A stretch of 64,000 bases of DNA from Penicillus capitatus (taxonomy: Eukaryota > Plantae > Chlorophyta): the NCBI GenBank assembly GCA_965649825.1, contig OZ287703.1:186001-250000 (forward strand), given 5' to 3'. The notes under the pieces were generated by a model that searched no databases, had not been told where the DNA came from, and saw only the letters and a list, made by a program, of their open reading frames with translations. Made by a program: the position numbers and the translations under genes. Each line of letters begins with the position of its first letter. Position 1 is the first letter of the stretch. This document shows, in pieces, positions 1 to 64,000 of this stretch.

Positions 1-2
1 AA

Positions 3-217: not shown

Positions 218-1643
218 ATGATTCGAACGCGAAACCTTATGGATCTGAAACGGTACAACACGCGAAGCTCGACGTTTCTTGACACCTCGACGCCTTTTAC
301 CCTCAAGTCGGCCGCCGATCGCCGTCCATCGCTCTCGACGAAAGGCTCTTCCGGCTGAACAGGGAACGGTTAAAAGTACTTGTGCTCGGCGTGACCGTCA
401 TCCCCCGCTTCGTCTTGGCATTTGTCGCTCTCTGCTTGTTTGCGCTGGTCAGTGGCATCGCGACCTTTCGATGGTATGTATGTACGTACGTGTGGCGGCT
501 TGGAGGCGATGGGTTTGCGATGTAGTCCAGAGAATCAGCCACTCAAGGGGTGGCGGCGGTGCCTCATGGGCGTCTGTCCTTACTTTTGCCTCACCGTCGT
601 CTTTCTGATGGGCTTCGTTGTGAAGATCAAAGGATGGAGCAATTATAAACGGGCAGTGAAGGAAGGCGTCAACGTCGGTCGACACTCCTCACCTGTCACA
701 TCATCTCACACGTGTGATGCTAGATCGCTGTTTTCAATCACGTCTCCTATGCCGATGCCTTTGTCCTCGTCGGTCTGATGGGATGCTCAGGTCAGCGCCG
801 ATGATGTGACAGGCATCGATATCGATAGGGCGCTGCGTTTGTAGGCGTATCGAAAGAGAGCAACAAGAAACTGCCTATCTTAGGAACCTGTATCAAGGGA
901 CTGCAAAACATCTACCTTCCAGATCGTCGGCAGATTATCCAAAAGAAAAACGGAGAGCCGTCGGAGGCGAAACGATCCGATAGCGTCTCCGCTCAGATCG
1001 CTCAAAGGTCACCATCACAGCTGTCACATCATTTCCGAATGCCGGAGCGGATCATACAGGGCGAAAGATCGACGGTACCCCATAATAGCCCTGGCACCAG
1101 AAGGAACGTGTGGAAGCGGTTATTCATTATTGGAGTTCAGAACGGGAGCATTTGTGGCCGGGGAGCCCGTGCTGCCCGTCACGCTCAAATACGACGCCAC
1201 CAATATCAATCCGGCGTGGACCATCATCAACGAGCCCCTTCATCTCGTACACCGACCCACACCATCTCACACCTCTCATTGTATGATCTATGTGATCCAG
1301 CTTCGTCTGCTCTGCCAGTTTCGTAATCGTGTCGAAGTGACCTTCCTCGAGCCGTACTACCCAACCGACGCCGAGAAGTACGACGCGACGATCTATGCAG
1401 AAGACGTCCGTATGGTCATGGTACAGACGGCAATCATCACAGTCGTCCTGGCAATGCGTGTCGATGTAGGGTAGAGCATTGGGTGTGCCTCTCGTACGCG
1501 AGAACTACAATCATTTCCATGCGCTGTCGAAGCTCGGGGTGCGTGTCGCCTGGGATGGCAAGACGATCGAGGGCCCGCCCGGCGTCATCGATGCCGATGG
1601 GTATGTCGATTTGACACCAATTCTTGACAAAAAGTCTTCTTAA
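218..1643 (+). CDS. Lysophospholipid acyltransferase (LPCAT/LPEAT-like, PlsC family), multi-exon
   Basis: Exon translations give a TM helix PRFVLAFVALCLFALVSG, motif I NHVSYAD (~736-756), motif III APEGTCG (~1094-1114) and FRTGAFVAGEPVLPV, separated by short GT-AG introns. Stop TAA at 1641-1643; start is ATG 218 or 239. Confidence 0.85.
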
Positions 1644-1695
1644 ATGCTTGCAAGATGCACGTCCGTTTGCCCATCGCTGTCACATCACGATGTCC

Positions 1696-4655: not shown

Positions 4656-4912
4656 TTTTAGACAACGGTGGATAAGGCCTTCGTCGATTTTCAAGGAACG
4701 CACGTACCAACAAGGACGCTGCAATGATGTGACGGATGATGTACTGGCCCGCTGAGTCCGTCAACCGCTGAATCCGACTGTACGTGCACCAACTCGCGGT
4801 ATCGTTCGTGTAAATTAATTCTGAATTTCTGCTCTGGTTCCACAAAAGCAAGGACCAAGTGAAGATTCACGGGTGGGATACACGACGTAGACTTTAAAAT
4901 ACTGCGCATGCT

Positions 4913-8159: not shown

Positions 8160-9992
8160 TCAGCGCACAGCGGCATCCTGCAGGGAGGATAGATCGAGTG
8201 GCAGATCGGCGCACTGTTGATCGAAGAAGTGCAGCAATTCTCTGGCCGTCTGTGCCAGACCCCCCTCGATCTCCGATTCGATATTGAGAACGCAGAGGGG
8301 ATCGTGAATGGATGGACGCAAGAGACACCAGCCTCTCTTCCCATTCCCTTCCTTCACCTGTACACGCCATCCTTCGTAATTCTCCCTCTCCATTGTCCAT
8401 CGCTCCATCGCACCGGACTGCACGAAATCATGAAAGCGCTGCGTGGCCATGGTAGCGATCTCTTTGAAATGGACGTCCTGTGGAGAACAGTGTGTGTGAG
8501 TTGTAGTGAAGAGGGGAAGGGGAGAGCCTAACTTGGATGCGAATACGGAACTCTTGTGCCTCGAGGGGCTCGGGCAACAATTCGATCAGATCCTTGATGC
8601 TGCCCTGTCCTTGCTGTCTGCGTCGAACCATTTCTACGACGATCTTCAGCGACATGTATGCGCCATCGTCCAGAAAGTAATTTTCTTTCAATGCTCCGTG
8701 TCCACTCGTCTCCATCATCAATTCACAGTTCTGGCCTTGGCGATTCAATTCGATGCCTTTGCCGATGACGTTTTTGTAGCCACGTTTGTAACGAAAGTGC
8801 CGTCCACCCAGATCTTCGATAAACTGTGTGAGGCCGTTGGATGTGACGGAGTCCGTGACGATCGTAGTTCCTGGATGCTCGCGAAGGACGATGGCGGACA
8901 TGAGGGCGATCATGCGATTGCTGTTGATACTGACGCCGGATGCGTCGACGACGCCGCTCCGATCGACGTCGGTATCGTAGACGATACCCAGATCGGCGCC
9001 CGATTTCAGCACGGCGTCGATGCCGGCGGCCGCCGCTTCGGGATCCTCAGGATTGGGAATGTGATTCGGAAATCGGCCGTCCGGTTGCAGAAACTGACTG
9101 CCTGTCACATCAGCGCCAAGTGGCGCAAGCACATCGATCGGCACGAAACCACCAGCGCCGTTTCCTGCATCGACGGCGATCTTGAATCCGTCGAGGGGAC
9201 GTTCGCGATCTGTATCGAGAGATCGGCGAATGATCGAACGTAGATGGGATGCGTAGACAGGCATGAAGTCGATCGTCTCGATCAATCCCGGCGTCACCGC
9301 CATCGCCTTGCCCAACAGTAAACTCGTACACTGCATCGCATCCTCTACAGCAAGATCGGACATATCCTTCATGTCGACAAAGGGCACGCGCACCTAGATC
9401 GATGCCAGCGTCGATGCATGCTTTACTGCTACGTTGGAGGATGTTTTTGATGTCCGGTTTGTCCAATCCTCCTGTCCCATCGAAGAATTTCATACCGTTG
9501 CGATTGAACGGAAGATGCGAGGCCGTGAGCATGATGGCACCATCGAAACGGTAATCGTCCATGATGCAGCTCATGAACATAGCCGGCGTCGATGACAGAC
9601 CAAAATCTGCCACATGAACGCCTTGTGATGTTAATCCCAGTGTCACGGATGTTTTTACCAGTTCCCCTGAAAGCCACGACCCATTGTTGACACTCTAATA
9701 CTGCGATTAACCTGATAGTCGCGGATCGCGTCCGATCGAGATGCGCAGATCCGATGGCGATGTATGCGTTCGATCGGACAGCCACTGAACGAAACCGATC
9801 GATATGAAGTAAAGACGAATGGGCGTCAGTGTGATCGCTTCATCGGAGATTCCTAAAAATCGATCGATCCATCAAGGGTTTCGTGAAAGGAAAGAGATGG
9901 TGGGGCCGACCTTCCATGGCAATGCCACGGACATCGCTTCCTTGTTGCAAATCGCCAAACGTTTTCTCGATCGCTTTACCATCGACCGTCAT
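8160..9992 (-). CDS. Phosphoglucomutase/phosphomannomutase family (alpha-D-phosphohexomutase), multi-exon
   Basis: LQQGSDVRGIA, catalytic-serine motif MLTASHLPFNRNG, metal loop DTDVDRSG, YKRGYKNVI and METSGHGA. The 5' end is uncertain and may extend to ~10110. Confidence 0.9.
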
Positions 9993-10179: not shown

Positions 10180-11169
10180 ATGTCTAAGATCGCTTCGCCG
10201 CTGCCTCGACGGATCACGCGTCTGCCGAGATGTCAAGCGATCAAGAGCGTAAAGACCGATCGAACGTACCAACATTTAGCGAAACGCGTCGCTGTGCAGG
10301 TCGAAGCATCCCAACGCGAAGTTCTGCAATGCTTGGAAAGAGTACCCCGTCGAGGACAGGGAGGATTGGACACGGAATCGAAGCGACGGTTTGAATCTGC
10401 CGTGGAAGTACTGGAAGAGGACGGCGGTTTGCCGGTAAGGCATTCGACGCCTGTCACATCATAAACACAATGAGACAGTGATGTTTAGTGCCCGGCATCG
10501 TCTGAATTACTGATCGGCTGCTGGAAACTGTTGTTTACCTCGGTCCCTGGGACAGAGTCCCCCATACAGAAGACGTTCACTGGGATCGATGCTTTCAACA
10601 TCTATCAAGACATCGTGGACGATGCACTGCAGATTCGGCTCGTGAATCGAGTGGATTTTGGCCCACGGGTTCAGTCACTTCCCCCATGGTTCGGTTTCTA
10701 TAAGGGAGGTACTTGTATAGATCGGCGAGCTAAAAGTGGAGGCGGAGGTTAGTACCCAGAATCGTCCGATCCCTGGTTTTGTACCTCGTCAAGGCGAAGG
10801 ACTGCCGTTTTTCGGCAAAACCATTCTAAAACCGCCGCCTAGAGATGTCTCCCCGACACCATGATGTGACGGACCGCTTGACGAGAGGTGTTGTTGACAG
10901 GACTGCCGATTGGACATTTGGTTTGATCAAGGCGCATTCGACTTCGCCTTTCTCCCCTTCAAGATTCCTTATCCCGTTCCTTTCCGACTCTTCGGAGACG
11001 AAACAAAAGTACGACACCACAGAGAATACCATACCCTTGACTGAAGGCTGCACCCCAGGCCTGGTTTGATGTGACCTATCTCTCCAGAGACGGCACTTTT
11101 CGATTGACCCGTGGCAGCAAAGGAACACTCTTCGTTCTCACCAAAGAAAAAAGTGAAAAGACATCATGA
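10180..11169 (+). CDS. PAP/fibrillin plastid-lipid-associated protein, multi-exon
   Basis: Transit-like N-terminus, GCWKLLFTS, FDQGAFDFAFLPFKIPYPVPFRLFGDETK and WFDVTYLS...RLTRGSKGTLFVL; stop TGA at 11167-11169. Confidence 0.88.
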
Positions 11170-11211
11170 TGTGACAGCCATTCAGCAAAGCCAGACACCA
11201 TCGTATCTCCC

Positions 11212-14075
11212 TCAGAAGAGACGCTCTTCATCCATCGAGATCTTTTCGGATGTCGCAATAAGGACGATGCATGAGTGTGCGAGCATGGGATAGAGATTCT
11301 GTGCAATCCAGGGGGCTTTGAATGATTTTGCCAGTGTTGCTGTCTCCTGATCCAAGGCATCGTCCGAGAGGAGCATGTCAAAGGGCGCCTCTACGCCGGT
11401 ATCGACCACAATCTCCCATTCCTTCCCCTCCAACACCGGCAACTGAACGACGCGCGGGGTGTGACTGGAATTGAAGGCAATATAGATGCCGCTGTCATCA
11501 TCGGCATTGGAAATGGAATACGCAACAAAGCGACTCGTTTCAGACCAGTCCGGCTGATAGGGCACATCTCCATGCCACACGATCTCCTCTCCCGACACAT
11601 GCTCCCTTCTGCAAAACTCAGGTCGAGACAACCTAGACCATGCACTCGCACAGAGGCACACACTCGGTGGACTGACCTGAAACGCGTCAGGAGACGGATG
11701 AAGCGTATGAGATCGTTATCGTGTTTTGCAGCTTGATCCCAGTTGAACCAGTTGAGTGCGTCGTCATGACAGTAGGTATTATTGTTTCCTTCTTTGGAAT
11801 GGCCATATTCGTCGCCCATCACCATCATCGGCACCCCGTGCGACAGCAGCAATGCACAGAAGAAGTTTCGAATCTGACGGCGGCGGAGACGGTGGATGGC
11901 AGGATCGGTTGTGGCGCCTTCACGGCCAGAATTCCAACTCGAGTTGTGTGTCTCACCATCGCGATTCTCTTCGCCGTTAGCTTCGTTGTGTTTCTCATTG
12001 AATGAGACGAGATCTGCCAAGGAGAAGCCGTCGTGTGCCGTGACAAAGTTGATGGAATGCATCGGACCCCGTCCACCAGACCAACGCTTGCCACCATGCG
12101 TTCGCCACCAGTTGGACGAATCTTCGATGTCGTTGCTGTAGAGATCGGGCGATCCGCAGAGAACAGCGGCAAAGTCGCCAGCCCATGTCCCATCGGTGCC
12201 CTTAAGGAAGTTGCGCACCACGTCGCGGAAGTTTCCGTTCCATTCGGCCCAACGGCCACCGTAGTGCGGAAAAGCGCCAACTTGATTCAGTCCATCGCAG
12301 TCCCATGCCTCCGCGATCAGTTTGGTGTTCCGTAGCACCGGATCTTCGCTGATCATCGCAATGAGTGTCGGATCGGAGAGCGGTGTGCCAGTCGCGTCGC
12401 CAGCGCCGCCTTCCATGTGTCCCCTTCCGTCCACCACCGTATCCCCATGAATGCCCAATCGTGTTCCGCCCTCGCCAATCTCGCCCATGTGCCAAGTGGA
12501 ATGCGCACGCGTCATGATCGATGCCAGATCGAAACGAAATCCATCGATGTGCATCTCGGTAACCCAGTACTTTAGGGAATCCACAATGAACTGACGTACG
12601 ACTGGATGATTGCAGTTGAAGGTGTTGCCGCAGCCAGAGTAGTTATAGTATTCGCCTCCGGGAGCCAACATGTAATAGATGCGATTATCGATGCCACGAA
12701 ACGACAGCGATGGTCCTTGATGATTGCCCTCGGCTGTGTGATTGTAGACGACATCCATCACAATTTCCATCCCTCTCTTGTGACATTCGCGCACAAGTGT
12801 CTTGAATTCGGCAAGGAGGTCTTCTCCCGTGCCGCCTTCTGCCACAGCTGCACTGTAACGCGACATCGGAGCGAAGTAATTGACGGTGGAGTAGCCCCAA
12901 AAATTATAGCGATAGGAATTCTCTGTCCCCGGAATGCGTTTGTAGTACTCCAATTCGTTGAACTCGTGAACAGGCATGAGTTCGATGCAGTTGATGCCGA
13001 GTTTCTGAAGATAGTCCAGCCGCTCAATCATTCCACGATACGTTCCTAGATACAGACAGACATCTATGCAGTGATAACAGGCGACAGACATGCACACCAG
13101 GTGCCGAAACGCGACTCGAAGGGTCTTGAGTAAATCCCCTAACATGCATTTCGTAGATAACCAAATCCTGTAGCGGAATATTTGGCGGCCGATCGCCTTG
13201 CCAGTCAAATTCCGATTTTCCGGAGGGAACGCACGAGGCACAGAGCGACCAGGTACGGGAAAGACCCGGAGCCGTCGCATCGTCCAATTCCTGTCTGTAT
13301 GTTCGACAAGGCCAGGAGAGCGAATGGGATTAACGTACGGGTCCCAGTTCTCCAAATTTCCGTCGGCCGATGATGGTCGTGGCATAAGGATCGAGCAAGA
13401 CGACGCGATCATCGTGGCGATCGCCAGCCACATCTGCCCCATCCTCCACTTCTTCGTTCTTCTCTTGATGCCGTCCTCCGATGCGGTATCCTGTAGCAGT
13501 CAGCTGTCTTGTCAGGATGCATGTGATGTGACAGACCGTAGAGGAGCTTCCTTTTGTGAGCTCCGGGCAACGCAATGTGCCAGACATCGCCTGTGCGATT
13601 GTGCAGCGGATCTAATTCGATTTCCGTCTGCTGTGTCCCGCTCTCGAGATCTGTATCGGAGAAGAGCACAAGCGATACTCGTGCGGCACTGGAGCTGAAG
13701 ATCGCAAAGTTGACGGCACCCTACATGCATCCAGACAATGAATGATGTGACGTGAGATCCGTTGCGTGCCAGAGAGGCGTCGTAATGGGCCCCGAGGGGA
13801 CGGGGACGTCCACAGAGTGGAGATTCAAAGAGAGCATGAGCGTTCTGTCCCGAAGGCTCCGTCGCTTCGCGGTCCGAAAAAGGGACGAGACGTGGTGGAG
13901 GGGTAACAGCAGGTGCGACTTTCACCGTCTTTGGTGCCGTGGCACGAATGCAGACACGACGCCTGAGACGACCCGATGCGCCGCGCGTCGCGACAGAACG
14001 ACGCCGTTCGCGACGCGACGACGTTCGGCGAATCGACGGCGCGAGTCGAACAAATCTCGTCGTCGAGAAGATCAT
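11212..14075 (-). CDS. ISA1: Isoamylase 1 (starch debranching enzyme, GH13) with transit peptide, multi-exon
   Basis: [71 protein letters not shown] and NFVTAHDGF. Confidence 0.95.
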
Positions 14076-41071: not shown

Positions 41072-43619
<2,548 letters not shown>

Positions 43620-48165: not shown

Positions 48166-51100
48166 TCACGCGATATCGTCGTCGTCGTCGTCTTCCAATC
48201 CCCAATCGTCCAAATCGGCCTCTTCTGTACCGACAGCCGCCGGCGGCGCCTCCTCTGCTTCGAGAAATGTCTCTTCTGTTGTCGCGTCCTGTGGAACGCC
48301 GCCGTTTTCGTTTGGCCTTTGTGTCTCCTGCATCTCTCTCAGCGGATGCGCTCGATTCGATCCCTCCACTTCGGGAAACGCCGATGCTGGAGGGGGATGC
48401 GCCATGCGTTGTCTGGCAAAGCCTTCGGCCTTTAACGCCAGCTCCAAGTCTTCAAACATGTTTGGGTACTCTTTGGGATCGGCCAGTGCCTCGGCCGCTT
48501 TCGGATTGATCTTACGGACGTCCTGTTTCCAAAGATGCACGATATCGGAGATACGACTAGGTGCATAGGTCCGTGCAAAGAAGGCCGCTTCCGGCAGACG
48601 GTCACTCTCGACCAGCAGATCCACACAGGCATCGATCTCTCCCAGCAATAGATGGCACATGAAGGCTATGTTTGTCTTTCCGGTGGCTTTGGCCAGGGGA
48701 AGGAGTTTCTGCATGCCGGATCGTCGACTGGTGGAGCTGTAGAGCAACAGCAGTCCACTCACATCTTTGCCACGCAGCAGACACTCCTCACAGAGTTGCA
48801 TCTTTCCTTTGGCCATGGCCAGTTCGCCCAACTGCTTCCATTTCACTTCACTGTCCATCTCCTGTGCAATCTCATGCGCCGTCTCTAATCGTCCCAACTG
48901 AACGGCCAGATCGAATCGGTAATCGGGATCTGTTGCCACGTCCAATGCCTCGGACACGAGTTCTCTGGTCTCCAAGAATTTAGCAATCTCATTGAGCTTC
49001 TCTTTGGGAATCATCTTCAAAACCTCCTTAGCCGTATCCATGTCCCCACGAATCACAAGTGTCTTGTACTCAATAACCGTCAGCAATAAAGTATAGGAGG
49101 TGATCGAGAACTCCTTGTCGATCAGAAATACGCGACTCTGTGCTGCCATGTAGCCCAGGAGATACATCGGACGATCGAGATGAAAAAGCGTAAACACATC
49201 GCCTCCCACACAGTAGTTCAGTCTCCAGGCACTGTTGTTATAGACAAAACAGTCTCCAATCCACACAGCAGATACCACCTGGACGCATCAATCATCGATC
49301 CGTGCCCGATGGAATCAAGATTACCTGTTCCGAAACGTCCTGCACAACTTCGAAGGCATCTTCGATGCCATCTTCGTCCACCGCCTCTCCACTACTGAAC
49401 ACCTCATCCACGACGTCTTGCTTGAATTCTAAGATGTAGAACGAATCGGCGGTGGTAATGGCCAACCAGTCGCCTGAATCGGACCAGTAGACGTTCTTGA
49501 CACTGACATCGATCCTAAACCATCGCCGCTATGGATGGATCCGATCAGATGGATGTGAACTGGATGGAGGGTGCGCTTCATCCCGAGGCACTTACCGTCG
49601 AACAATGCGACCAGCTGTCCAGTCGTAGAAGACGATGAAGTCCGAGGCCTTGACGCCGATCAATGCCCCGCCGAAGATCGTCTCCATCGAGAAGCTGCAC
49701 TTGATCGTCTGCTTCTCCTGAAAATTCTTGAAGATCTGCACCTTCGACCTGTCACATCACATTGCCTCACACAAAAGCAATGCGATCGACAAAAGTGTGA
49801 CCAGCCAGATTTGATGGCATACTCATTGGCTTCGGATCCCCAAACAAACTGCTCAGCATTTCCAAAGCTCTTGTTGCGCCAGGCCAACGCCGTATAGATA
49901 ATATACTCCCCATCGCCACACACGGCCACGAATCTCCCGTTTCGGTTATGCTGCAGAGAGTGGGGATAGGCATCCGTCGATCCGAGATCTTTAATACCCA
50001 ATGGCAAACGCTCCCCATCTGACATCGCATAGTCTGCCGGAAGCGATTTGAGATTCGTTGTCTGGATCTCGTTGTTCTTCGCCCACAGAATTTTCCCAGA
50101 AGCATCCATCGATGCAAGCGGCTCATCTTTGCCCAGTTTCAAAATCAGGACGCCTTCATCGTAGCCCACGCCCACGAGATTCAGACCCTTGCGGCAGCTG
50201 ATGGCCCAGACACGTTCTTTCCCTTCGGCGATCGTGTCTTCCAGACGGAACGTCGTTGAATGGAAGAGTCGTATCGTCCCGTCTTCAGATCCCGATATGA
50301 TAATGGGCTTCTCTGGATGGAAACATACGGACGAGACATTATGTGTATGTCCTTCCAGCACTTGCACACAGCCTTTCGTCTGGTAGTCCCATACACGGAC
50401 AGTCTTGTCATCGGCACCGCTCACAAGATACGGTCTGTCTCCCCCTAAGCATCCATCCGTCCATCCTCCACGTCACATCACAGCGATGACCGCACCGGTG
50501 AAGTAGTCGACGGTGTTGACACCCTTTTCGTGTCCTTCCAGAGTGAAGTTGGGCACAGGGGAACCCAGACTCCACACTTTGACGGTGCGATCCAACGAAG
50601 CACTGGCGAAGGTGTTTGTATCTTTGGGATTGAACGTTACCTATGACACAACGCTCGTATCATTGCCCACTCATGCACTTCTCACTCAAGGTCACACTTG
50701 CATGACGTAATGCGCATGGCCTTCAAACATCTGAACGCATTTCCAGTTCTACACCAAAGATCACCTCACGCAAAGTGGCAGAGCTGAGAGAGACAAGGAC
50801 GCACGTTGTCCCAGTCCCACAGTTTGATCAACATGTCATCGGATGAGGAGAGGAGGTAAGGAAGGGTTGGATGCACAGCTAAGCTTCTGCACAAACGCAC
50901 GGAGTCAGAAGCGACGGACTGGCAGTAGACACGAACGACCGTATGTAATCCGTATGCGCCTCGAAGCTTTTCTCTTTGTCCATCGTATTGTAATTAAACA
51001 CACGAATCGTCATGTCATCCGATCCAGCGACAACCCATTGCTTACGGACAATGAATTTGGCGGCGCGGACTGCAGAGAGGACGCATGCTCAATGAGGTGT

Positions 51101-52222: not shown

Positions 52223-54044
52223 ATGGGAGCCGTCGCGCCACAAAGCATCAACGAAGCTCAACACAACGCCGTCCTCGTCGCCGGTGAAGAATCCGTCGGA
52301 CGACAGCTACGTCTCCGCACACTCAGTGCTCAGGAATACATCGGCGGGCAGCTTACTGAATTTCGCTCAGAAACGGGAGAGCACAAATTCACCGCGCATG
52401 ACGGACGGGAAGAATGGGTCTCCTTAGCCCATCGGGCCTTCCAATGGATGTCGCCCATGCCAGCAAATGCTCGACCCAATCCAACCTTTATGCATTTCCC
52501 GGGGAATCACGAAGCCATTGGTTGGAAAGTCCAAGTGTACTGGAACGAGATGGGCCGATGGTATAAGGGACGCGTTCGTGCCTACGACCAAATGACCGGA
52601 CTGCATCAAGTCAAGTATTTTGATGGAGATGTTCGATGGTATACCGTACGTGATGAGGCCATCTTGTGGATCTCCGAGATGCATGGAACAACGGCGACAG
52701 CGACGGCGGCGGCGGTTAAGAAATCTACAAACGGCATTACGGGAACGGCACCGGAGGGATCGGAAACGGACACGCAACGAACGAAAACGCCAAGAAGCAA
52801 AACAAAAACGCCGAGACATCAGAAGAATACACCGTCGACCGTGCCATCGACCTCCACATCATCGTAGATTGGACATTTGTGTGAGAAGACAGAGAGAGTG
52901 CATTGATCCGAGTGTTGTGCGCAGGATGGAATCGTCGCAGAGCGGTCGATTAGGACATGAGATGCATGACATCCCCCGACGAAATCAGTTGCCTGGTGGA
53001 ATGACGCTGCGACCGAGAAAACCTTCAAACCTAGGTCATCATACCATTGACAAGAACCCCAAAGCTTGTATTCTGCATTGCCGTGTTGCGATTTTTTGGC
53101 CAAGCGATGACAAGTACTACAGGGTAGGCATCCTTCATCGCGCCGCCCATCTGTACCTTGGACGTCGGAGAGGGTGATGTGACAGGGTACGGTTCAAGGA
53201 TACAATGAAGAGAGTGAGAAATATCGAGTGCTGTACGACGACCAACAAGACGAAGAAATGTCATTGGAGAAGGAGGTGTTCAGATGGCTCGGGCCTAAAG
53301 GCATCACCGCAGGATACACAACATCGATGCACGAGATCATGGCCGTTCGTGGAGCAACGAACGTGTGCCGTATTCGGTCATCGCCAACCATCGAAACGGC
53401 GCGCACGGATCTCGCGGCGCTCTCTCGGCCGAAAGAGGCAGTCGGCCGACGGCTGTTTATCTATTGGGAGGCAACGGGCGAGAAGATCGAAGCCGAAGTG
53501 CTCTCGTATGATCATCGACGGAAACTGCATTATGTATGGTATCGCGATGGAGAGTTAGAATGGGTCGACCTGAAACGCGAGCGCTTTGCCTGGATCGATG
53601 ACAAGAATAACAATCGGTTGGTTCGGGAATTCCCCGCTGGCCTCGATGAAGGTAGTGTTGTTGGTTCGTTCGGTTTCTTCAAGACATATACACACCACAG
53701 GCGAGACAATACCTCGCGGGAAAGCGGCCGTTGGTTGGCGAGTTGCGGTGTACTGGAGCGAAGACGTTCAGTTTTATGACGGTCGCATATCAAGTGCGCG
53801 AGGCATTGGTGCATCAAGAGTGAGATTGAGTGAGATACTGTATGTAGAGTACAACGCCGATACGGGACGGCATGACGTCGATTACGACGACGGACAGATG
53901 GAGACGCTGTCGTTATCTTCGGAGAAGATCACGTGGAAATCCTCGCCGCATGCACCGAAGAGCACCTGCCATTCCATCGATTCCAGTTCCAGTTCAGAAC
54001 ATCAGGTGATTCTCACGCCACATCGACATCGACAAGTGATGTGA
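52223..54044 (+). CDS. Protein with about five tandem Tudor-like domains, multi-exon; ends uncertain
   Basis: Repeated G(W/R)R/KV.VYW....Y.G.V..Y......H.V.Y.DG..E...L units at ~52300, 52510, 53070, 53440 and 53720. Confidence 0.75.
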
Positions 54045-54522
54045 CGTCCACTCTCGTGCCTACGACCACGTGTTGGATGGCGTGACGCGCGTCGCTTCGT
54101 CGCACATTCTTGCTTTTCCTATCGCTTGACGGCACAGGACCCTCGACATCTGGTCGCACGTACGAACGTCCGTATCACGACGACCCATGCACGCACGTAC
54201 ATACGCACATACGTAGTACGTCTTTTACGACGAGCGAGATTCCGATGCACCGCACGCGCGAGACGTTGACTTTGCCAAAGGCGTCTGTCTTAGTCGAACA
54301 ACAGCAACTGGTTTGCGAATGGCTTCCTGAATGATGGAACCCGTTTGTGTGATGTAGAAGACAACTCCGACGCGGAAGAAAACTGCAGGGCACGTTCAGG
54401 GCAGTCCCAAACAGAAACGTCCCCGTCTGCCGTCACCCCCTTCGACTGACCTTGCCAAAGAGAACAACGCTGGCCCCGAGCCAGCCACTCGTCCACAGGA
54501 AACGTCACTTCACGGGGAAACG

Positions 54523-56303: not shown

Positions 56304-56732
56304 TTGACAGGATAAAATCGTTCAGGCCATCACAGTGTACGACATGGACACACGCGTGACATCCACACGTAGTGAGAGGGCGACCATTTATGAACTTCGC
56401 CCGGAGTTCATATGGAACTTCATTGGCTGCTTAGAGTCCACGAAGGATGAAAGTCGCTTCTGACGGACAACAGTCAGCCGCCGGCGCGCGGACAGAGGTC
56501 GCGCGCTCCGTTGCGCTCCCTGGGCACGTCATCGCAAACAATACGATATGTCACATCATCATGCAACTTTCAAGATTCACGCGTGATGTGACAGGACACG
56601 ACATGTGAGCTGTTGTCCATCCATCCGACTCACATCTGTCGGCGTCGTTTCAATACCAAACAGTACAGGTGCCTGGTCCCTCTCATCACGTTCTGAAGGT
56701 ATTGGATCAAATAAGTGATTTTCGGTTGCCGT

Positions 56733-58482
56733 TTATTGGACATAGCGATTGAGTGCGCCGGGCAGGACTTCAATCAGAGAGCAAACGCGGCGGTCGCTTG
56801 CTTCCAGTGTGTATTCCCTACCTAGCAGCCATTCCTTGTGGCCGTCCATCTCTCCAAGATGCGTTTGGAGTTCGGGAGCGTCGAGAGCGAAGATACTGTG
56901 GATGTGACGGGTTGTCTGGATACCGTTCATCTGAAGGTTATCCCACATCGATCGTTCGGGATGCGTCATGATCTTCCGAAACATCGACGGCTCCCATCTG
57001 ATCACGATCGCCGTCGATGAGGTCACACTTGAGTGAGATACCGTGAAAGAGCGTAGAGAACGGGATCATTGGTCTCAGCCACGCGCAGGACGATTTGCCT
57101 CTCGATGAGGGGCTCCGTCATCGACGGCGTCCATACTGCATCCCACTTCCATGCCATATCCAATTCCGCCACAGACGTGCGATCCTGTCGCGCCATCCTG
57201 CGTCTAGAGAATGAGAAACGGCTCGTGTACCACGACAATGGCAGACTGAACGAGATTTTCCAGTTGCTGCGTCATCGAACCCGTGTTCACTAACATCTGC
57301 ATACCGATACCGTTGCTGTATCCTCCCAACGAGGGACCCTTACCTGAATCTGCGCATGGTATGCCACGGAGCATTCCTGCAAAGCCTCTTCTGGAGTCGC
57401 CTCCAAATCGACACCATCAGACAACGTCGGACGTTCATCTGCTTACTTTCCAAACCAAACGTGCGTCGATGCGTTGTTGCGGTGAGTTGTCGTATGATCC
57501 TCGAATTGTCGAGAGCGCGATGTGTCGATTGCCTCGGCCTTTGATTTTCGCCATAGACTTGACATCGCGCACGCCGTGCGAAGAGATTCTTGTAATCACC
57601 ATCTTCAGCCGTTGTGCGTTGAGCGTGTCGTCTACATTACGCACGCCGTCGAAAGCCCCGCCCCTATTCTCAGCGTCGTGTTCGAAACGTCGCCAGTCGT
57701 ATGGAGCCAAAAGCCAACGGGCCGTATGTCATTTCGGTCGACCAAGCGAGTCCCGACGCTGCGACGTCTGCTCTCGATAGATTCCAACCCACTTCAGAAG
57801 CCTTTACCATGCACAGCATCTCTGGTCCCTCCTTCATCCGCCGCCAGAAAGAATTAGCCGCCCCCTGTTACCCAAGTCATCCCCTCCACACACCTCTCGC
57901 CTATTCACCTTTTGCATTCTTTCAGTTTCAGCCTTGGCATGGTATCTCCTGCGTGATGTCTGTGATTGGTATGACTCAGACTTCACTCAAGATGGAGAAG
58001 AGAATTCGCCAACGCGATCCATCTCCATTCGGCTTCTCCTCCTCTTTGTTCCCCTCCTGGCTGCAGTGGACTGCATTGTGAACCTCTTCGTTTGTCTTCT
58101 CATCTTCCCCATGATCTTTCTCAAATGTTGCTATCCTTTCAAACCCAAGCTCGTCGAGGCCAGAAAGAACGGACCGCCTGTCTCCTGTACATCGTCCCTG
58201 TCTACCGGCCACTCATGTGTGATGACTGTGTGATGTGACAGGTTGTTGTTTGCATGAGGCGTGTGATCCGCTTTTGAGAGTACTGACCTCGCTCAGTCTG
58301 ATCATCCATACGCCATTGGTGCTCTCAGGGATCTGCATTCCCGAACGTGTAGTGGATCGGTTTGTCTACTGGGCAGATGGTCACACATCTGGATTCCTTT
58401 ACATCGATCGAGGATGCCTGTGCTGTTCGACGCAGTATTCCTTCGGAATCTTTTTTCGAAATCGCTCAGTAGGCGACGTCAT
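56733..58482 (-). CDS. Hypothetical multi-exon protein
   Basis: Exon-like frames join through short GT-AG introns (for example WK|ATPEEALQECSVAYHAQIQ|MLVNTG..AIVV|TSVAELDMAWKWD). Putative start MTSPTERF at 58482; family not recognised. Confidence 0.5.
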
Positions 58483-59394: not shown

Positions 59395-61819
59395 TCACAA
59401 GGCTACAGATTTTGCCTTTGTGAGGAAAGAAGACGTGATGGGCGCTGCCGCGCTGCTGGTGCTATTGCGGGTTGAATCTGTACGCAGGGATTTGGGGACA
59501 AAGGGCGGTGCACTGGGATCCAGCTTCACAATCGCATTCTCCGCAACGGCACGTTCCGTCTCAAAACCACGAGATCCATCAGGACCTCTTGCTATTCGAC
59601 TGGCACTTCCACCAATATTCCCTGTCCCCGGCATCAGCCTCGTGCGCTCTGGTACGGACACAGAACGGTTTAGGGCGCGCTCCATCGCCAACAGAGGAAT
59701 CTTCTTCTCCACCAGAGACGTCCCATCATCTTCAATTCTGTAGAATGATGGTGTTGGACACGAGAGACAATGGGGATATTACTTGATGACACGTCGAGCC
59801 TGGTGCTGTTGTTTATTGGGATTATACACGCGCACGAATTGGACGGTGTCATCGACATTGAGGATGGTATTGTTGTCCACTTCACTGCAGTGGAAGAAAA
59901 TGTGTGACGTGCCTCTTTCGTGCTCGTAATCGATGAAGCCATACGATCCGTTCTGCACGATCGAGGCAATGCGTCCCATATACTTCACTAAGGACACCTG
60001 TGTCGCGCGGCGACCTCCCGCTTTGGCTCTCAGTCCATCTAAACGCTCAGCTGCTTTGGCCTGGGCCAGATTCACAGCAATACGAAAAGACGCCTTATCT
60101 CCCACTTGGGGATTTAGTTGCCGGTCCTGTAGAGCATCGTGCGTTATCTCACACATACCAAAAGAGTGAGATACCTCGAGATCAGAGGGCCCGTAAGAGA
60201 GTTTTTCTGACTGTCCGTCTTCGCTCTCGTAGAGAATCGTTCCGGTGCTCCCCGGTCCGTACTGCTTCCATAGTCCCAGTCTCTCCACGACCACTCCATA
60301 AAACACTTCGTCTGTCACTGTCTCAAAAACAGCGGATCCAGGTGCAGCTTTGGAGACCCTGAATTTCGGTCCAGGCGCGATGACGAGGGCACATGGAGGT
60401 TTCACTTGATGGCGATCTGTTTGCCTTTCTCGAGATCCCATTTCACAGTGAAGGCAACGTCGTCTCCTAATTGAAGCTCCTCTGGATCCACATGATCTAA
60501 CTCATCAAAGTTAAACAACACTTCGTTATGCCTCTCACAACACTTGATAAAACCAAACGATCCTTTCTTTATAGAAATCTGCCAGAGGCAAAAGAGTGAC
60601 GTGACGTCGAGAAAGAGTGAGAGCATTTGTCCTGCGCACTTTGCCAAATTCACGTTGATCCGGTGCCTTTTCGAGCAGCTTTATATCCAGGGCACGGCCT
60701 TCCTGTCGATAAATCTGACGATAGATACGAAACTGCACTTCATCTCTTTCATCCATAGCGACCTTTTGATCCTCCACCTATCCGCCAAACAATTCTCTCC
60801 TTGTCAGAGGAGATCACACGTGTGACATGGTGATGGCCATAAAAGGCTTTCTGTTCAATGCCATCGTCATCGGTGTAGCCGATAAGACCGTCTTCTCGAT
60901 GATCATCTGGCGTCGGTGCTGTTGCTGGTTTGATGATGTGACCTTTGAAATGCCCTTCCACTTCGCTCTCTTGTACAATCGTCCCTTTCGGCAGCAGAAC
61001 AACATCGGCCGCAAACATACGACTGCCTTCTTGACAAACAATGTACGAAACCTCCGATCCGATCTCGAGCATCGACGGCTTCCATCCACTTTCGCAACGA
61101 ACGTACTTAAAATGAAAGAAAAGCCGACCGAGATGCGGACGTGGTCGACTACGATGCACAGGAAGCGTGATCAGACAAGTGTGTCCAATACCGAAAGCAA
61201 TAGCGAAACCTGATGAATCCATTCGTGTCCTTCAACCGGCACACAATTCCATGCTCGCGATACTTTCCCTCCACTTCGCCCGTAGGAACGTGTGTGTTCA
61301 TCGCCATCTGAAACATCGGCTCTGTGTGGGAGAGGACATAGAAGGCGACAGCTTGCTTTCTCGGCTTCCTGAATCTCGTGCGGGAGGAGTTTTCGAACCT
61401 GATGGGACATATCATACAGCGTTCCCTGCTGCCAAATGCGTGTGTGACCTTGTAGGCATGAAGCTGTCCATTTTTGCGCTCGCCCACGACGAAACTAACA
61501 TCCGTGCCCGGAGTCAGGTGGAGATGAAGGTCGAAGGCTGTGGTGTCTTTCGGTCTGTCGGTGACGTCGTCTGCTTGGAACAAAAGTGGGTCCACAATCG
61601 ACGGCGATCTAGGGGAAGCGTCAAAATCGATGATGGCGTTCGGAAAAGATGCGGAGACTGGACGGACCGCAAGAAACCAAAGCCTTCCTTAACCGCCACC
61701 ACGATTCCTTGTTCGGTCCTCTCTTCGACTTCGCCGTCTGACAATGTTGGTATGTTCGCTTCGGCGCGGTCGGCGATTTCTTCTTGCGCCCCATTCGATA
61801 CAGGCACTGTCTCAGTCAT
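59395..61819 (-). CDS. Multi cold-shock-domain RNA-binding protein, CSDE1/UNR-like, multi-exon
   Basis: Repeated G.V...K..FGFI....LFFH units (VKEGFGFL, KDTNGFI..LFFHF, KKGSFGFI, NGSYGFI..IFFHCSE); C-terminal IARGPDGSRGF (SUZ-C-like) and LDPSAPPFVP (PAM2-like). Confidence 0.8.
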
Positions 61820-61878: not shown

Positions 61879-63038
61879 TCAGCCTAATGTTAAGACATGT
61901 CGCTTTGACAGCCCGTTTTTGAAATCGCGAATTCCGAGAGGTTTGCTGCCCGGTCGCTGGACCAACAACACTTCCAATACAGTTCCCTCGCCGCATTGAA
62001 CGAACAAACGCCGATTCCGTTCGAAACAGACGCCTTGACGAAAATCCAAAAGTGCAGCTGTCGTATCGTCTGGCATTCGGGTTTCCAGAATTCGGAGCTC
62101 GAGATCACGAAACGATGCATCAAGGGTGTCGAACACTTTGAACAGCGCTCTGGTGCCTGGCCACGGCGCAAAGGCTCGAACCTTGTTGTGCAAAGCAATC
62201 GCTGGCCGTTCGAACAGGAGCAGCGATTCCGAGGCATCCATCTTAGGCGCATGGGTAACGCCAGCGGTGTTTTGCGGTGTGTAAACGGCGGTTCCGTTAA
62301 AGACGGACGGCAACGATGCGATCAGCAACTCGGTCCCGATCGAAAAGAGCTCATCGAGCAGTTCAGGCGCCTGAAAAGAGGGACGTCGTGACGGAGAGAG
62401 ACGATGAGATAGGTGACTTGGATATTGGCGTCGATGTCGACGGCATGTATCGCGAGAATGGGACCGGCGTCCAGTTCTCTCACTGTGCGGGCAATCGAGA
62501 CGCCCGTTCGATCGACGCCATCTTCGATCGCACGGTTCACCGGCGCCGCTCCACGATACTTCGGCAGCAGACTGGGATGGATGTTGAGCGTTCCGCACGG
62601 CGGTATCCGCAAAAAACGCGTCGGCAGAAGATTCCCGTACGCAGCTGTGATGCAGAGATCGGGTTTCAGTATCTCCATCTGAGCCAGAAATGCATCGTCT
62701 CTTGCCGAGGCAGGTGTCAAGAGTGTGGTCTCGGGGATGTAACCGCAGTCCAACGCCAAGGCAGAGACGGGCGTCGGCGATGGAATGTTTCGGTTTTTCC
62801 GCCCTACAGGTTTGTTGGGCTGACTCACGACGGCCGTGATCTCGAAAGGACACATCGGTTTTCTCGACTCCTCCAACAATCGCTCCAGTACATTGGCTGC
62901 GACGGATGGCGTCCCGAGAAAGACGGCGGATTTCTTAGCGAATGCCCTGACGCCATGACGTGTACTTAAGACACGGACCCGCGGCAAAGAAAGCGCTGAG
63001 ACAATCCGCGGCATTTGCGTGAAGGTCGCTATCGCCAT
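61879..63038 (-). CDS. FMT: Methionyl-tRNA formyltransferase, organellar
   Basis: VFLGTP, VVSQP, DLCITAAYG, LNIHPSLLPKYRGAAPV, LDAGPIL and NKVRAFAPWPG; start at 63038 or 63014. Confidence 0.93.
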
Positions 63039-64000
63039 GCGACATGCGTCGCGACATCTCTTCCTGCAAGTTTGGCTCAATGGATCAGCCGCCCGTCCGC
63101 TCTTGACCGTGGATCGAACGCATTCGCTCTTTGCGTCATTCTCGAGCGGAGCCGAACCACCGGATGACGATTCGAAATCGCCGACGGTGTCCGGATCGAC
63201 GGAAACGACAAAGCCGAACCTCAAACGCAAAGTGGACGCTGCTTATCGTCCCGTTTACGGCCTCAACCAACCGCATCCGAAGATCTCATCCGAGATGGAT
63301 CAATACATCTTCAAAGACATGAAATCGTGCATCCCCCGTCCGATCGTTTCGTCATGTGGATTTCGCTTTCATCAGATGCGAAGAGATCGAAGGCGCGGTC
63401 TACGAGATTTGGGATCGAATGACGATGCGCGAGGTCGAAGCTGCCTTCTATGCCCTGAAGCGACTCAACGAATATCCCCCGACGTCTCTCCTCGAAAAAC
63501 TCTCGCAGAAGACCATTCAAGTGGCCGACGAGATCACCTGTCGTAACATCTCCTCCATCTTTCTTGCCGCCGCCCGTCTTAAGTACTGGCAAATGGATGG
63601 TATGGAGCGAGGGAAAGAAGGCCGGGCCATGTGTCTGTAGGTATTTCAATCCTGCATTGTTTAATTGTCTGGCGAGGGAGGCTATGAAGCCAGAGAAGCT
63701 ACAGGACTTTCAAGGCGTCTTCTGCGGAACGATCGTCTATGCAATGGGCGCCCTGCAACGGCATTTCACTCGATCGCGGCCTCCCGTTACGAATGACGAA
63801 TCCATTGAGCTGTACTTCCCTCTGCAACTGGACCTGCTCGAGACGATGGCGCATCGAACGTTAACAGTACGCGACGAAGCTGGGCATACCAACAAGAACA
63901 TCGGCAACTTTGTCTACGGTCTAGCCATGATGCGACACAGGTCTGTCACATCAATGATGTCCTTCTCGAAGTCTGTGTGGTGATTGGACAGGCATGAGCC
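63037..64000 (+). CDS. Organelle-targeted helical-repeat (OPR/RAP/FASTK-like) protein, 3' partial
   Basis: Arg/Ser-rich presequence, then repeats such as REVEAAFYALKRL, RNISSIFLAAARL and KNIGNFVYGLAMM. Confidence 0.6.

What the first reader, a model, noticed from the sequence alone, without database searches (positions are those of the whole stretch)
693..63953. A 9-12 bp motif (CCTGTCACATCA) saturates short introns and UTR gaps but avoids the island
Seen: about 30 exact GTCACATCA/TGATGTGAC copies, against roughly 0.5 expected for a random 9-mer on both strands of 64 kb. About nine extend to CCTGTCACATCA. Most lie in ~50-nt introns or tiny intergenic gaps and occur in both orientations relative to transcription. 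Some form palindromes (acatcatgatgt at 11161; 45810; 45965; 63945), and TCACAC/GTGTGA variants are common in other introns. Only two copies, duplicates of each other, fall in 14.3-38.2 kb. Inference: orientation independence points to a DNA-level signal, such as a site for an abundant chromatin or general regulatory factor, a nucleosome-linker mark, or the relic of an intron-generating transposon, rather than a splice signal.
Basis: partly seen in the sequence, partly recalled or inferred. Interest (0 to 1): 0.75.

Follow-up and report, generated by a model that had tools for sequence, protein, structure and literature searches.

The report
Conserved two-way motif in algal introns
A siphonous green alga and its sister species keep an exact 9-base word (GTCACATCA) in about one in five of their tiny introns, in either orientation and under strong selection, while close relatives lack it, so it looks like a young signal read on double-stranded DNA and is neither a splice signal nor transposon debris.

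Summary
GTCACATCA/TGATGTGAC occurs 32 times in 64 kb against about 1 expected. It is the top-ranked k-mer at k=7-10 against order-3 and order-5 Markov backgrounds. The window comes from a very compact Bryopsidales green alga with ~50-nt introns and weak splice signals.

Seventeen copies lie in introns (3.6 per kb), 5 in other non-coding DNA (0.6 per kb) and 4 in the 24-kb methyltransferase/P450 island. Intronic copies are 9 sense and 8 antisense, at variable distances from the splice sites.

The motif is very sharp: 32 exact copies against 27 for all single-mismatch variants together (22 expected).

In a sister species (~88% DNA identity), 20 of 24 non-coding copies are exactly preserved, against 13% of control intronic 9-mers (P~1e-14). 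Both orientations are conserved equally.

A syntenic outgroup (~70% identity, 45 kb), Bryopsis and Ostreobium have no copies. Every orthologous intron that could be aligned in the outgroup is present there without the motif.

There are no inverted-repeat partners, no whole-intron similarity and no extra intron length. The introner/relic reading and the splice-signal reading are therefore rejected.

Best reading: a clade-specific, selected duplex-DNA element in gene bodies, probably a protein-binding site. Its function is inferred, not shown.

The parts
695..703 (+). Motif copy, sense, in intron 674-723 of the LPLAT-like acyltransferase gene (+). Exact in the sister species.
802..810 (-). Motif copy, antisense, in intron 791-844 of the LPLAT-like gene (+). 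Exact in the sister.
1023..1031 (+). Motif copy, sense, in intron 1008-1059 of the LPLAT-like gene (+). Exact in the sister.
1679..1687 (+). Motif copy in the 52-nt gap between convergent stop codons (1643 and 1696). Exact in the sister. The outgroup gap is about 10 nt and lacks the motif.
4725..4733 (-). Motif copy, sense, in the 5' region of the starch-branching-enzyme gene (-). The exact feature (5'UTR, first intron or transit-peptide region) is uncertain. Exact in the sister.
9104..9112 (+). Motif copy inside the phosphoglucomutase coding exon (gene on -). Not conserved in the sister, so probably a chance occurrence.
10453..10461 (+). Motif copy, sense, in intron 10435-10488 of the fibrillin-like gene (+). 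Absent in the sister (CTCCCATCG at the same position, with no indel).
10862..10870 (-). Motif copy, antisense, in intron 10847-10900 of the fibrillin-like gene (+). One mismatch in the sister.
11067..11075 (-). Motif copy inside a coding exon of the fibrillin-like gene (+), antisense. Kept in the sister; differs in the outgroup.
11167..11175 (-). Motif copy overlapping the TGA stop codon of the fibrillin-like gene (+), in the 45-nt gap before the convergent isoamylase stop codon. Exact in the sister.
13524..13532 (-). Motif copy, sense, in isoamylase intron 13491-13536 (-), 4 nt after the 5' splice site. One mismatch in the sister.
13743..13751 (-). Motif copy, sense, in isoamylase GC-AG intron 13721-13769 (-). 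Exact in the sister.
19016..19024 (+). Island copy in non-coding DNA; a duplicate of the copy at 31173.
23297..23305 (-). Island copy inside a Methyltransf_33 ORF; a duplicate of the copy at 35883.
31173..31181 (+). Island copy in non-coding DNA; a duplicate of the copy at 19016.
35883..35891 (-). Island copy inside a Methyltransf_33 ORF; a duplicate of the copy at 23297.
39237..39245 (-). Motif copy inside an Nramp/EIN2-like coding exon (gene on +), antisense. Kept in the sister; the outgroup has GTGACATCG.
44986..44994 (-). Motif copy, sense, in importin-alpha intron 4 (44957-45005), 11 nt after the 5' splice site. Exact in the sister. The intron is present without the motif in the outgroup, L002, Bryopsis and Ostreobium.
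45184..45192 (-). Motif copy, sense, in importin-alpha intron 3 (45138-45200), 8 nt after the 5' splice site. Exact in the sister. The intron is ancient and lacks the motif in the outgroup.
45810..45818 (+). Motif copy in the ~100-nt gap between the TRAPP stop codon and the importin ATG, antisense to both genes. Exact in the sister.
45965..45973 (+). Motif copy, antisense, in TRAPP-subunit intron 45948-45993 (-). Exact in the sister.
46389..46397 (+). Motif copy, antisense, in TRAPP-subunit GC-AG intron 46367-46424 (-). Exact in the sister.
47026..47034 (+). Motif copy, sense, in Ycf48/HCF136 intron 46996-47045 (+), with a tandem near-copy GTCACATCC at 47017. Kept in the sister, where the exact copy is the first of the tandem pair.
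49751..49759 (+). Motif copy, antisense, abutting the 3' splice site (TGATGTGACAG|) of COPB' intron 49749-49801 (-). Lost or absent in the sister.
50472..50480 (+). Motif copy, antisense, in COPB' intron 50445-50495 (-). Exact in the sister.
53175..53183 (-). Motif copy, antisense, abutting the 3' splice site of Tudor/Agenet-like gene intron 53124-53185 (+). Exact in the sister; the outgroup intron lacks it.
54037..54045 (-). Motif copy overlapping the predicted stop codon at the end of the Tudor/Agenet-like gene (+), antisense. Exact in the sister. The annotation of this gene end is provisional.
56550..56558 (+). Left arm of the only inverted pair (GTCACATCA-N25-TGATGTGAC) in an unannotated stretch. 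Both arms are exact in the sister while the spacer has diverged.
56584..56592 (-). Right arm of the inverted pair. Exact in the sister.
58231..58239 (-). Motif copy, antisense, abutting the 3' splice site of intron 58187-58241 of an unnamed + strand gene. Exact in the sister; the outgroup intron lacks it.
60934..60942 (-). Motif copy inside a coding exon of the cold-shock-domain gene (-), sense. Kept in the sister; differs in the outgroup.
63945..63953 (+). Motif copy, sense, 4 nt after the 5' splice site of intron 63941-63991 of the FASTK/RESC6-like gene (+). Exact in the sister; the outgroup intron lacks it.

Best explanation
[C/A][T/C]GTCACATCA is a young, clade-specific cis-element that natural selection maintains. 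It is read on double-stranded DNA, so orientation does not matter. It lies mainly in the ~50-nt introns, and secondarily in the UTR-sized gaps, of ordinary intron-containing nuclear genes of this compact Bryopsidales alga.

Most likely it is the binding site of one highly sequence-specific DNA-binding protein acting inside transcribed gene bodies. A 9-bp asymmetric site fits, for example, a three-finger C2H2 protein or a TALE-homeodomain pair, and a subset of sites carry an abutting half-palindrome that suggests occasional dimer binding. The effect could be to license or boost expression, as in DNA-level intron-mediated enhancement, or to help co-transcriptional recognition of introns whose own splice signals are minimal (GT/GC...YAG).

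Shown here: the enrichment, sharpness, feature distribution, orientation independence, purifying selection, clade restriction, and origin inside pre-existing introns.

Inferred, not shown: that a protein reads the motif, and what the outcome is.
For: Enrichment and sharpness:
- 32 copies against about 1 expected; top k-mer at every k from 7 to 10.
- 32 exact copies against 27 copies over all 27 single-mismatch variants (22 expected).

Distribution:
- Introns 3.64 per kb, other non-coding 0.62, CDS 0.22, island 0.17.
- Introns vs other non-coding, P=1.3e-4. Island non-coding vs non-island non-coding, P=2e-6.

Orientation:
- 9 sense and 8 antisense in curated introns, at variable distances from both splice sites.
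- The same 5' flank preference (CT) appears in both orientation classes (sequence listings).

Selection:
- 20 of 24 non-coding copies are exact in the sister species (~88% identity) against 12.9% of 1006 control intronic 9-mers scored the same way; binomial P=1e-14.
- Flanks diverge right up to the motif edges.
- Sense and antisense copies are equally conserved.

Clade restriction:
- The sister has 33 copies in 52.7 kb.
- A syntenic outgroup has 0 in 45 kb and no comparable word of its own.
- Bryopsis, Ostreobium and L002 have 0.

Half-palindrome: TGATG abuts the motif in 3 of 32 copies, P=4e-5.

Precedent for orientation-independent, DNA-level signals in introns: PMC3355757 and bioRxiv 10.1101/269852.
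Against: - No binding protein, expression data or chromatin data are available.
- Typical transcription-factor sites show a halo of weaker variants; here there is almost none.
- The 6-fold preference for introns over UTRs and gaps is not predicted by a simple 'any free DNA will do' binding-site model.
- There is no significant bias toward gene 5' ends (median 532 vs 657 nt from the ATG, P=0.27), whereas plant intron-mediated enhancement needs proximity to the transcription start.
- There is no spacing periodicity.
- Gene models are my own, built from codon statistics plus conservation, so some feature assignments are provisional (4725, 54037, 56550/56584).
- Only about 64 kb of this genome and about 60 kb of the sister were available.
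Confidence: 0.55

Rival explanations
1. The motif acts at the RNA level. It would be an intronic or UTR element bound in the pre-mRNA (a splicing enhancer or silencer, a branch-site helper, a retention or decay signal). The two orientations would be read by two different factors, or would pair with each other within or between transcripts.
For: The motif is about 6 times denser in introns than in other non-coding DNA. Splice signals in this alga are very weak: 5' splice site GT or GC only, 3' splice site YAG|G, so auxiliary intronic signals are plausible. Three antisense copies supply the 3' splice-site AG (49751, 53175, 58231), and two sense copies sit 4 nt from the 5' splice site (13524, 63945). 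Both orientations contain a GU[C/G]AC stretch.
Against: Sense and antisense copies are equally frequent and equally conserved. The same 9 of 9 bases are required in both orientations, which a single RNA reader cannot explain. Position within the intron varies from 4 to 51 nt from either end. Only one inverted pair exists, and the predicted hairpin there is unremarkable (z=-1.6). The partner stem in importin intron 4 is not conserved in the sister. Copies also occur in 3' gaps and exons.
Confidence: 0.15
2. The copies are remains of a mobile element: an introner that created these introns, a tiny MITE, or excision footprints. They would now be neutral.
For: There are many dispersed copies in both orientations in non-coding DNA, restricted to one clade. 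One inverted pair, GTCACATCA-N25-TGATGTGAC, has intron-like size. One pair of introns shares 20 of 21 nt around the motif in opposite orientations. There is copy turnover between the sister species.
Against: All motif-bearing introns that could be aligned exist at the same positions in the outgroup without the motif; importin introns 3 and 4 are also shared with L002, Bryopsis and Ostreobium. There is no inverted partner beyond chance. Intron-to-intron similarity is limited to 14-21 nt and never reaches the splice boundaries, which is the defining criterion of PMC9860276. Motif introns are not longer (52 vs 51 nt). Copies are 83% exactly conserved against 13% for neutral intronic 9-mers. There are too few one-mismatch variants for decaying relics.
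Confidence: 0.05
3. The motif is a nucleosome-phasing or linker mark. This is a special case of the DNA-level reading, in which a barrier factor bound at the motif positions nucleosomes so that short introns sit in linkers.
For: Orientation independence and intron preference. Several neighbour distances are near 200, 410 and 630 nt.
Against: The periodogram of pairwise distances is no stronger than for random placement in non-coding DNA (maximum power 3.5, P=0.42). About 80% of introns lack the motif.
Confidence: 0.1
4. The pattern is produced by a non-selective, motif-generating or motif-preserving mutational process (targeted gene conversion, templated repair or modification-dependent mutation bias), without organismal function.
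For: Lineage-specific copies differ from the other species by patches of 3-4 substitutions within the 9-mer without indels (10453; sister copies at window ~40520 and ~40558, which include non-synonymous changes). GTCACATCA is one CpG-deamination product of GTCACGTCA, and window TGACGTGAC corresponds to sister TGATGTGAC at ~51301.
Against: The other deamination product, GTCATGTCA, is not enriched (1 copy). No template or repeat source was seen. Conservation stops exactly at the motif edges at 20 independent loci. Depletion from island non-coding DNA is hard to explain by mutation alone.
Confidence: 0.07

Closest known systems
Intron-mediated enhancement (IME) signals of plants, e.g. TTNGATYTG in Arabidopsis (PMC3355757; bioRxiv 10.1101/269852)
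   Same: Short sequence signals that lie in introns, and also work from UTRs or exons, of transcribed genes. They work in either orientation, and the authors interpret them as acting on DNA rather than RNA.
   Different: IME motifs are degenerate and redundant, and are confined to roughly the first kb after the transcription start. Here the word is an invariant 9-mer with no significant 5' bias. It also sits at stop codons and in 3' gaps, and it is restricted to one young clade. No expression effect has been measured.
Binding sites of general regulatory or insulator-type factors (yeast Reb1/Abf1/Cbf1; Drosophila BEAF-32/DREF; CTCF sites in introns that slow RNA polymerase II) - comparison from my own knowledge
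   Same: High-copy, sharply defined, orientation-independent DNA words associated with housekeeping genes in compact genomes. They are conserved between close species and can influence co-transcriptional events.
   Different: Those sites concentrate in promoters and nucleosome-free intergenic regions, not in about 20% of introns. The binder here is unknown.
Introner elements / transposon-derived introns (PMC9860276)
   Same: A repeated sequence found in many short introns of an alga, in both orientations, and lineage-specific.
   Different: Introners share similarity across the whole intron up to both splice boundaries, often have TIRs and TSDs, and create new introns. Here only 9-11 nt (rarely up to 21) are shared, there are no TIRs or TSDs, and the host introns are ancient.
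TALE-homeodomain (KNOX/BELL, PBX-MEIS type) composite sites such as TGAT-TGACAG (from my own knowledge); TALE genes are expanded in Caulerpa (PMC6476727)
   Same: Read on the other strand, the extended motif is TGAT-G-TGACAG(G): two TGAY cores in tandem ending in the TGACAG core.
   Different: The spacing differs by one base from the animal PBX-MEIS consensus. The resemblance is recalled, not tested. TALE factors are developmental regulators and are not known to have thousands of intronic sites.

Membership tests
Introner / transposon-derived introns | Groups of introns whose sequence similarity extends to near both splice boundaries (PMC9860276). | tested here: not met
   All-against-all blastn-short of 88 curated introns gave only 14-21-nt matches centred on the motif; none reached the intron ends.
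Introner / transposon-derived introns | The host introns are lineage-specific gains. | tested here: not met
   The 13 motif-bearing introns that could be aligned (two each in importin, TRAPP, COPB', fibrillin-like and isoamylase; one each in Ycf48, Tudor and FASTK-like, plus 58187-58241) exist at the same positions in the outgroup species without the motif. Importin introns 3 and 4 are also present in L002, Bryopsis and Ostreobium. The three LPLAT introns were not covered by the outgroup contig.
MITE / DNA transposon | Terminal inverted repeats and target-site duplications flanking a unit of defined length. | tested here: not met
   The best inverted match within 70 nt of each copy is no better than at random positions (5 of 32 with at least 7 of 9 matches, null fraction 0.12). 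Only the 56550/56584 pair is inverted. Motif introns are not longer than other introns.
Spliceosomal signal (5' splice site, branch point, 3' splice site, polypyrimidine tract) | Strand-specific, at a fixed or narrow distance from a splice site. | tested here: not met
   9 sense and 8 antisense copies. Distance to the 5' splice site is 4-51 nt and to the 3' splice site 2-46 nt. A subset (3 copies) does donate the 3' splice-site AG.
Functional cis-regulatory DNA element (protein-binding site) | Over-represented, orientation-independent, and conserved beyond neutral expectation at orthologous positions. | tested here: met
   32 vs about 1 expected; both orientations; 83% vs 13% exact conservation, P=1e-14.
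Functional cis-regulatory DNA element (protein-binding site) | A specific protein binds the site, and mutating the site changes an output. | not testable with these tools
   No proteome-DNA binding or expression data are available. The organism is known only from metagenome-type assemblies.
Intron-mediated enhancement signal | Works in either orientation from within the transcribed region. | tested here: met
   Distribution and conservation are orientation-independent, and copies lie in introns, UTR gaps and some exons. This shows location only, not activity.
Intron-mediated enhancement signal | Concentrated within about 1 kb downstream of the transcription start. | tested here: inconclusive
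   Motif introns have a median of 532 nt from the ATG against 657 nt for other introns (P=0.27). 14 of 16 lie within about 1.3 kb, but the genes are short.
TALE-homeodomain composite site | Match to an experimentally defined KNOX/BELL or PBX-MEIS site, bound by such a dimer. | not tested
   The resemblance of TGAT-G-TGACAG is recalled from memory. A TALE expansion is reported for Caulerpa (PMC6476727). No matrix or protein was tested here.

The most novel reading that the evidence does not exclude
A previously undescribed kind of genome-wide 'gene-body mark'. In one young lineage of siphonous green algae, an invariant 9-11-bp word was written into about a fifth of the pre-existing ultra-short introns, and into the stop-codon-proximal gaps, of native genes. 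It is kept there by selection and read on duplex DNA by a dedicated factor. The factor would either license expression (distinguishing native, intron-bearing genes from foreign or silent DNA such as the intronless methyltransferase/P450 island) or slow RNA polymerase so that introns with almost no splice-site information are recognised.
Probability: 0.2. Interest if true: 0.85.

Novelty: new variant of a known kind. Interest (0 to 1): 0.7.

Why it matters
If this reading holds, the case is unusually clean. A single exact DNA word arose recently: it is absent at about 70% sequence identity and fixed and conserved at about 88%. It spread into many old introns and came under strong selection in both orientations.

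That would give a tractable natural system for three open questions:
- How DNA-level intronic signals such as intron-mediated enhancement work.
- How genomes with near-minimal introns and almost no splice-site information define their introns.
- How a new genome-wide binding-site repertoire is born.

It also cautions that repeated words in algal introns are not automatically introner debris.

Tried and rejected
- **Introner or MITE origin:** rejected (ancient host introns, no TIR/TSD, no whole-intron similarity, no extra length).
- **Branch point or other fixed splice signal:** rejected (both orientations, variable distance).
- **Structured RNA:** no Rfam family and no tRNA in the window. The single inverted pair folds no better than shuffles. 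The stem in importin intron 4 is not conserved.
- **CpG-decay by-product of GTCACGTCA:** rejected, because the sister product GTCATGTCA is not enriched.
- **Nucleosome-scale periodicity:** not detected.
- **5'-end bias:** not significant.
- **A counterpart motif in the outgroup lineage:** none found.
- **Literature string searches** for the motif and for intronic motifs in Bryopsidales found only incidental primer matches.
- **Technical dead ends:**
  - The first retraining of my gene finder ran away and was discarded.
  - The conservation-aware version over-predicts on the wrong strand, so it was used only after curation by known strand and gene bounds.
  - Two exact-protein look-ups found nothing.


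Full report
**1. The observation**

GTCACATCA/TGATGTGAC occurs 32 times in the 64-kb window. Dinucleotide-preserving shuffles give a mean of 1.0 and a maximum of 4. The 12-mer CCTGTCACATCA occurs 9 times against 0.02 expected.

An unbiased k-mer scan against order-3 and order-5 Markov expectations puts this word and its sub-words first at k=7, 8, 9 and 10.

The motif is extremely sharp. There are 32 exact copies, while all 27 single-mismatch variants together have 27 copies against 22 expected. The flank preference is [C/A] at -2 and [T/C] at -1; nothing is conserved on the 3' side.

**2. What the window is**

- Importin-alpha, COPB', Ycf48/HCF136, starch-branching enzyme, isoamylase, phosphoglucomutase and other genes identify a photosynthetic green alga.
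- The closest named relatives of its importin-alpha are Caulerpa lentillifera (81%), Ostreobium quekettii (79%) and Bryopsis sp. (77%), so it belongs to the Bryopsidales.
- The same contig is present in an ENA assembly.
- No eukaryotic gene finder was available, so I wrote a dynamic-programming gene finder. It uses codon log-odds and GT/GC-AG introns, and later adds codon-position conservation from two related species. I checked it against spliced protein alignments.
- Outside the island there are about 18 genes in 40 kb.
- Introns are 40-70 nt (median about 51). The 5' splice site is little more than GT (sometimes GC), and the 3' splice site is YAG|G.
- Gaps between genes can be as small as 52 nt between convergent stop codons.
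- The 'island' (14.3-38.2 kb) is a duplicated cluster of intronless Methyltransf_33 and P450 genes.

**3. Where the copies are**

| Feature class | Length (nt) | Copies | Copies per kb |
|---|---|---|---|
| Curated introns | 4,671 | 17 | 3.64 |
| Other non-coding DNA outside the island | 8,045 | 5 | 0.62 |
| Span classed as CDS | 27,383 | 6 | 0.22 |
| Island | 23,901 | 4 | 0.17 |

- Two of the six 'CDS' copies are uncertain (4725) or overlap a stop codon (54037). The four island copies are two duplicated pairs.
- Introns are denser than other non-coding DNA (P=1.3e-4). Island non-coding DNA is depleted relative to non-island non-coding DNA (2 copies in 15.4 kb vs 22 in 12.7 kb, P=2e-6).
- About 17 of 88 introns (about 20%) carry a copy.
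- Within introns, the top 7-mers are all sub-words of the motif and are enriched on both the sense and antisense strands.

**4. Orientation and position**

- In curated introns, 9 copies are sense and 8 antisense relative to the host gene.
- Distances to the splice sites vary widely: sense copies lie 4-30 nt from the 5' site, and antisense copies 2-46 nt from the 3' site.
- Three antisense copies abut the 3' splice site as TGATGTGACAG|G (49751, 53175, 58231).
- Two copies overlap TGA stop codons (11167, 54037).
- There is no bias toward gene 5' ends (P=0.27), no intron-length difference (52 vs 51 nt, P=0.44), and no spacing periodicity (P=0.42, low power).

**5. Related genomes**

- **Sister species.** Exact-protein look-ups retrieved contigs of a sister species that is about 87-89% identical in DNA over about 49 kb of the window (L003/L004, L008, L010/L011).
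- **Outgroup species.** Syntenic contigs of a more distant relative are about 65-74% identical, with GC 0.45 (L007, L009, L012).
- **Other relatives.** I also retrieved a short contig of another relative (L002) and loci from Bryopsis (L005) and Ostreobium (L006).
- **Motif counts.** The sister has 33 copies in 52.7 kb (z about 31). The outgroup has none in 45 kb and no comparable over-represented word of its own. Bryopsis, Ostreobium and L002 have none.

The motif system is therefore an innovation of the window-plus-sister clade.

**6. Selection**

- Of the 24 non-coding, non-island copies in the window, 20 are exactly preserved at the orthologous place in the sister. Two differ by one base (10862, 13524) and two are absent (10453, 49751).
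- Control 9-mers from the interiors of the same kind of introns, scored by the same lenient local best-match procedure, are exactly preserved in 12.9% of 1006 cases (mean per-base identity 0.77). The binomial P is 1e-14.
- Alignments show substitutions and indels right up to the motif edges.
- Sense and antisense intronic copies are equally preserved (7 of 9 and 6 of 8), so both orientations matter.
- There is some turnover: about five copies are sister-only (window ~1284, ~40520, ~40558, ~47497, ~51301).

**7. Origin**

- Every motif-bearing intron that could be aligned is present at the same position in the outgroup, without the motif. This covers the two importin, two COPB', two TRAPP, two fibrillin-like and two isoamylase introns, and the Ycf48, Tudor, FASTK-like and 58187-58241 introns. 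The three LPLAT introns were not covered by the outgroup contig.
- Importin introns 3 and 4 are also shared with L002. By tblastn exon boundaries, Bryopsis and Ostreobium share them too.
- Copies have no inverted partner beyond chance; the only exception is the 56550/56584 pair. That pair's predicted hairpin is unremarkable.
- Intron-to-intron similarity is limited to 14-21 nt around the motif. This fails the published Introner criterion, which requires similarity to reach both splice boundaries (PMC9860276).

The motif was therefore acquired inside old introns. It did not create them, and it is not decaying. How the copies arose (point substitutions under selection, or short patch conversion) is open. 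One pair of introns shares 20 of 21 nt in opposite orientations, and several lineage-specific differences are patches of 3-4 substitutions without indels.

**8. Mechanism**

Four properties point to recognition of duplex DNA by a highly specific reader, most simply a DNA-binding protein:
- an invariant, asymmetric 9-11-bp word;
- equal use and equal conservation of both orientations;
- the same flank preference in both orientations;
- occasional abutting half-palindromes (TGATG within 0-1 nt of the motif in 3 of 32 copies, P=4e-5).

The strong preference for introns of ordinary genes, and the avoidance of the intronless island, tie the motif to transcribed gene bodies.

The closest documented behaviour is plant intron-mediated enhancement. 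Its signals work in either orientation and from UTRs or exons, and are argued to act on DNA (PMC3355757; bioRxiv 10.1101/269852).

From my own knowledge, the sites of general regulatory or insulator factors, and intragenic CTCF sites that slow polymerase and affect splicing, are further analogues.

Read on the other strand, the extended motif TGAT-G-TGACAG resembles tandem TALE-homeodomain cores. TALE genes are expanded in Caulerpa (PMC6476727). This is a lead only.

What the element does is inferred, not shown. It could license expression, help co-transcriptional recognition of introns with minimal splice signals, or act as a chromatin barrier.

**9. Rivals**

- An RNA-level role fits the intron preference and the overlap with splice sites. 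It cannot easily explain why both strands need the same 9 bases and are equally conserved.
- A neutral transposon relic is contradicted on five independent counts (section 7, plus the conservation result).
- A nucleosome-linker mark is a sub-case of the DNA reading, without positive evidence here.
- A purely mutational process is unlikely. The alternative CpG-decay product is not enriched, and conservation stops at the motif edges.

**10. Novelty and verdict**

- Full-text searches found no description of this word or of a comparable intronic motif in Bryopsidales.
- I class it as a new variant of a known kind: a conserved DNA cis-element with IME-like placement.
- Its unusual properties are invariance, occupancy of about 20% of introns, strand symmetry, youth and clade restriction.

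**11. Limits**

- About 64 kb of this genome, and about 60 kb of the sister, were available.
- The gene models are my own.
- There are no expression, chromatin or binding data.

Noticed in passing
window 14300-38200 (ORFs 14541-15677, 16162-17523, 20230-21369, 22317-23600, 32382-33521, 34942-36192, 37048-38229): The 'island' is a cluster of intronless Methyltransf_33 (EgtD-like SAM methyltransferase) genes plus a cytochrome P450, with large internal duplications. It looks like a biosynthetic gene cluster, which is unusual in a green alga amid intron-rich housekeeping genes. A foreign origin or special regulation is worth testing.
   Followed up: partly
sister contig ctg303800: L004, L008, L011 vs window 1-14000 and 38157-54929: In the sister species the two housekeeping blocks that flank the island have the opposite relative orientation. 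Further methyltransferase/P450 copies lie beyond the equivalent of the window's right end (L010 ~19-20 kb). The island borders a rearrangement breakpoint.
   Followed up: partly
window 46367-46424 and 13721-13769: Two introns use GC-AG in this species (GCACGT, GCACGC), where the sister species has GT at the same position. Both carry the motif.
   Followed up: partly
window 706-717 and 60814-60825: The 12-nt perfect palindrome TCACACGTGTGA (a G-box-like CACGTG core) occurs in two introns; the expected count is about 0.01.
   Followed up: no
window, 15 sites, e.g. 3955/3967, 43155, 51369, 53818/53828, 60164, 60615: A second word, TCTCACTC/GAGTGAGA, is over-represented (15 copies vs 2.4 expected; 13 vs 2.0 in the sister). 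Eight of the 15 copies are in introns, on both genomic strands (orientation relative to the host gene appears mixed, judged from the intron listings only). Intron 3952-3997 holds it as a hairpin, TCTCACTC-TTTT-GAGTGAGA. The main motif may not be the only intronic word in this genome.
   Followed up: partly
window 1643-1696; 11169-11212; 45724-45830: The genome is extremely compact. Convergent stop codons lie 52 and about 45 nt apart, and about 100 nt separate one gene's stop codon from the next gene's ATG. In the outgroup the first gap is only about 10 nt. Neighbouring transcripts must overlap, or UTRs are almost absent.
   Followed up: no
window 45138-45200 and 50445-50495: Importin intron 3 and a COPB' intron share 20 of 21 nt (ACGTCACATCACAGNGATGAC) in opposite orientations. 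This is more than the core motif and hints that some copies arose by copying a longer patch. The extension is not conserved in the sister.
   Followed up: partly
L003 positions aligned to window ~40520 and ~40558 (Nramp/EIN2-like C-terminal exon): The sister species has two exact motif copies 38 nt apart inside coding sequence, where the window differs by four substitutions each, including amino-acid changes. Either direction of change is unusual for neutral drift.
   Followed up: no
window 53850-57700: A stretch of about 3.8 kb has no convincing gene model on either strand, yet is about 89% identical to the sister. It contains the only inverted motif pair (56550/56584).
   Followed up: no
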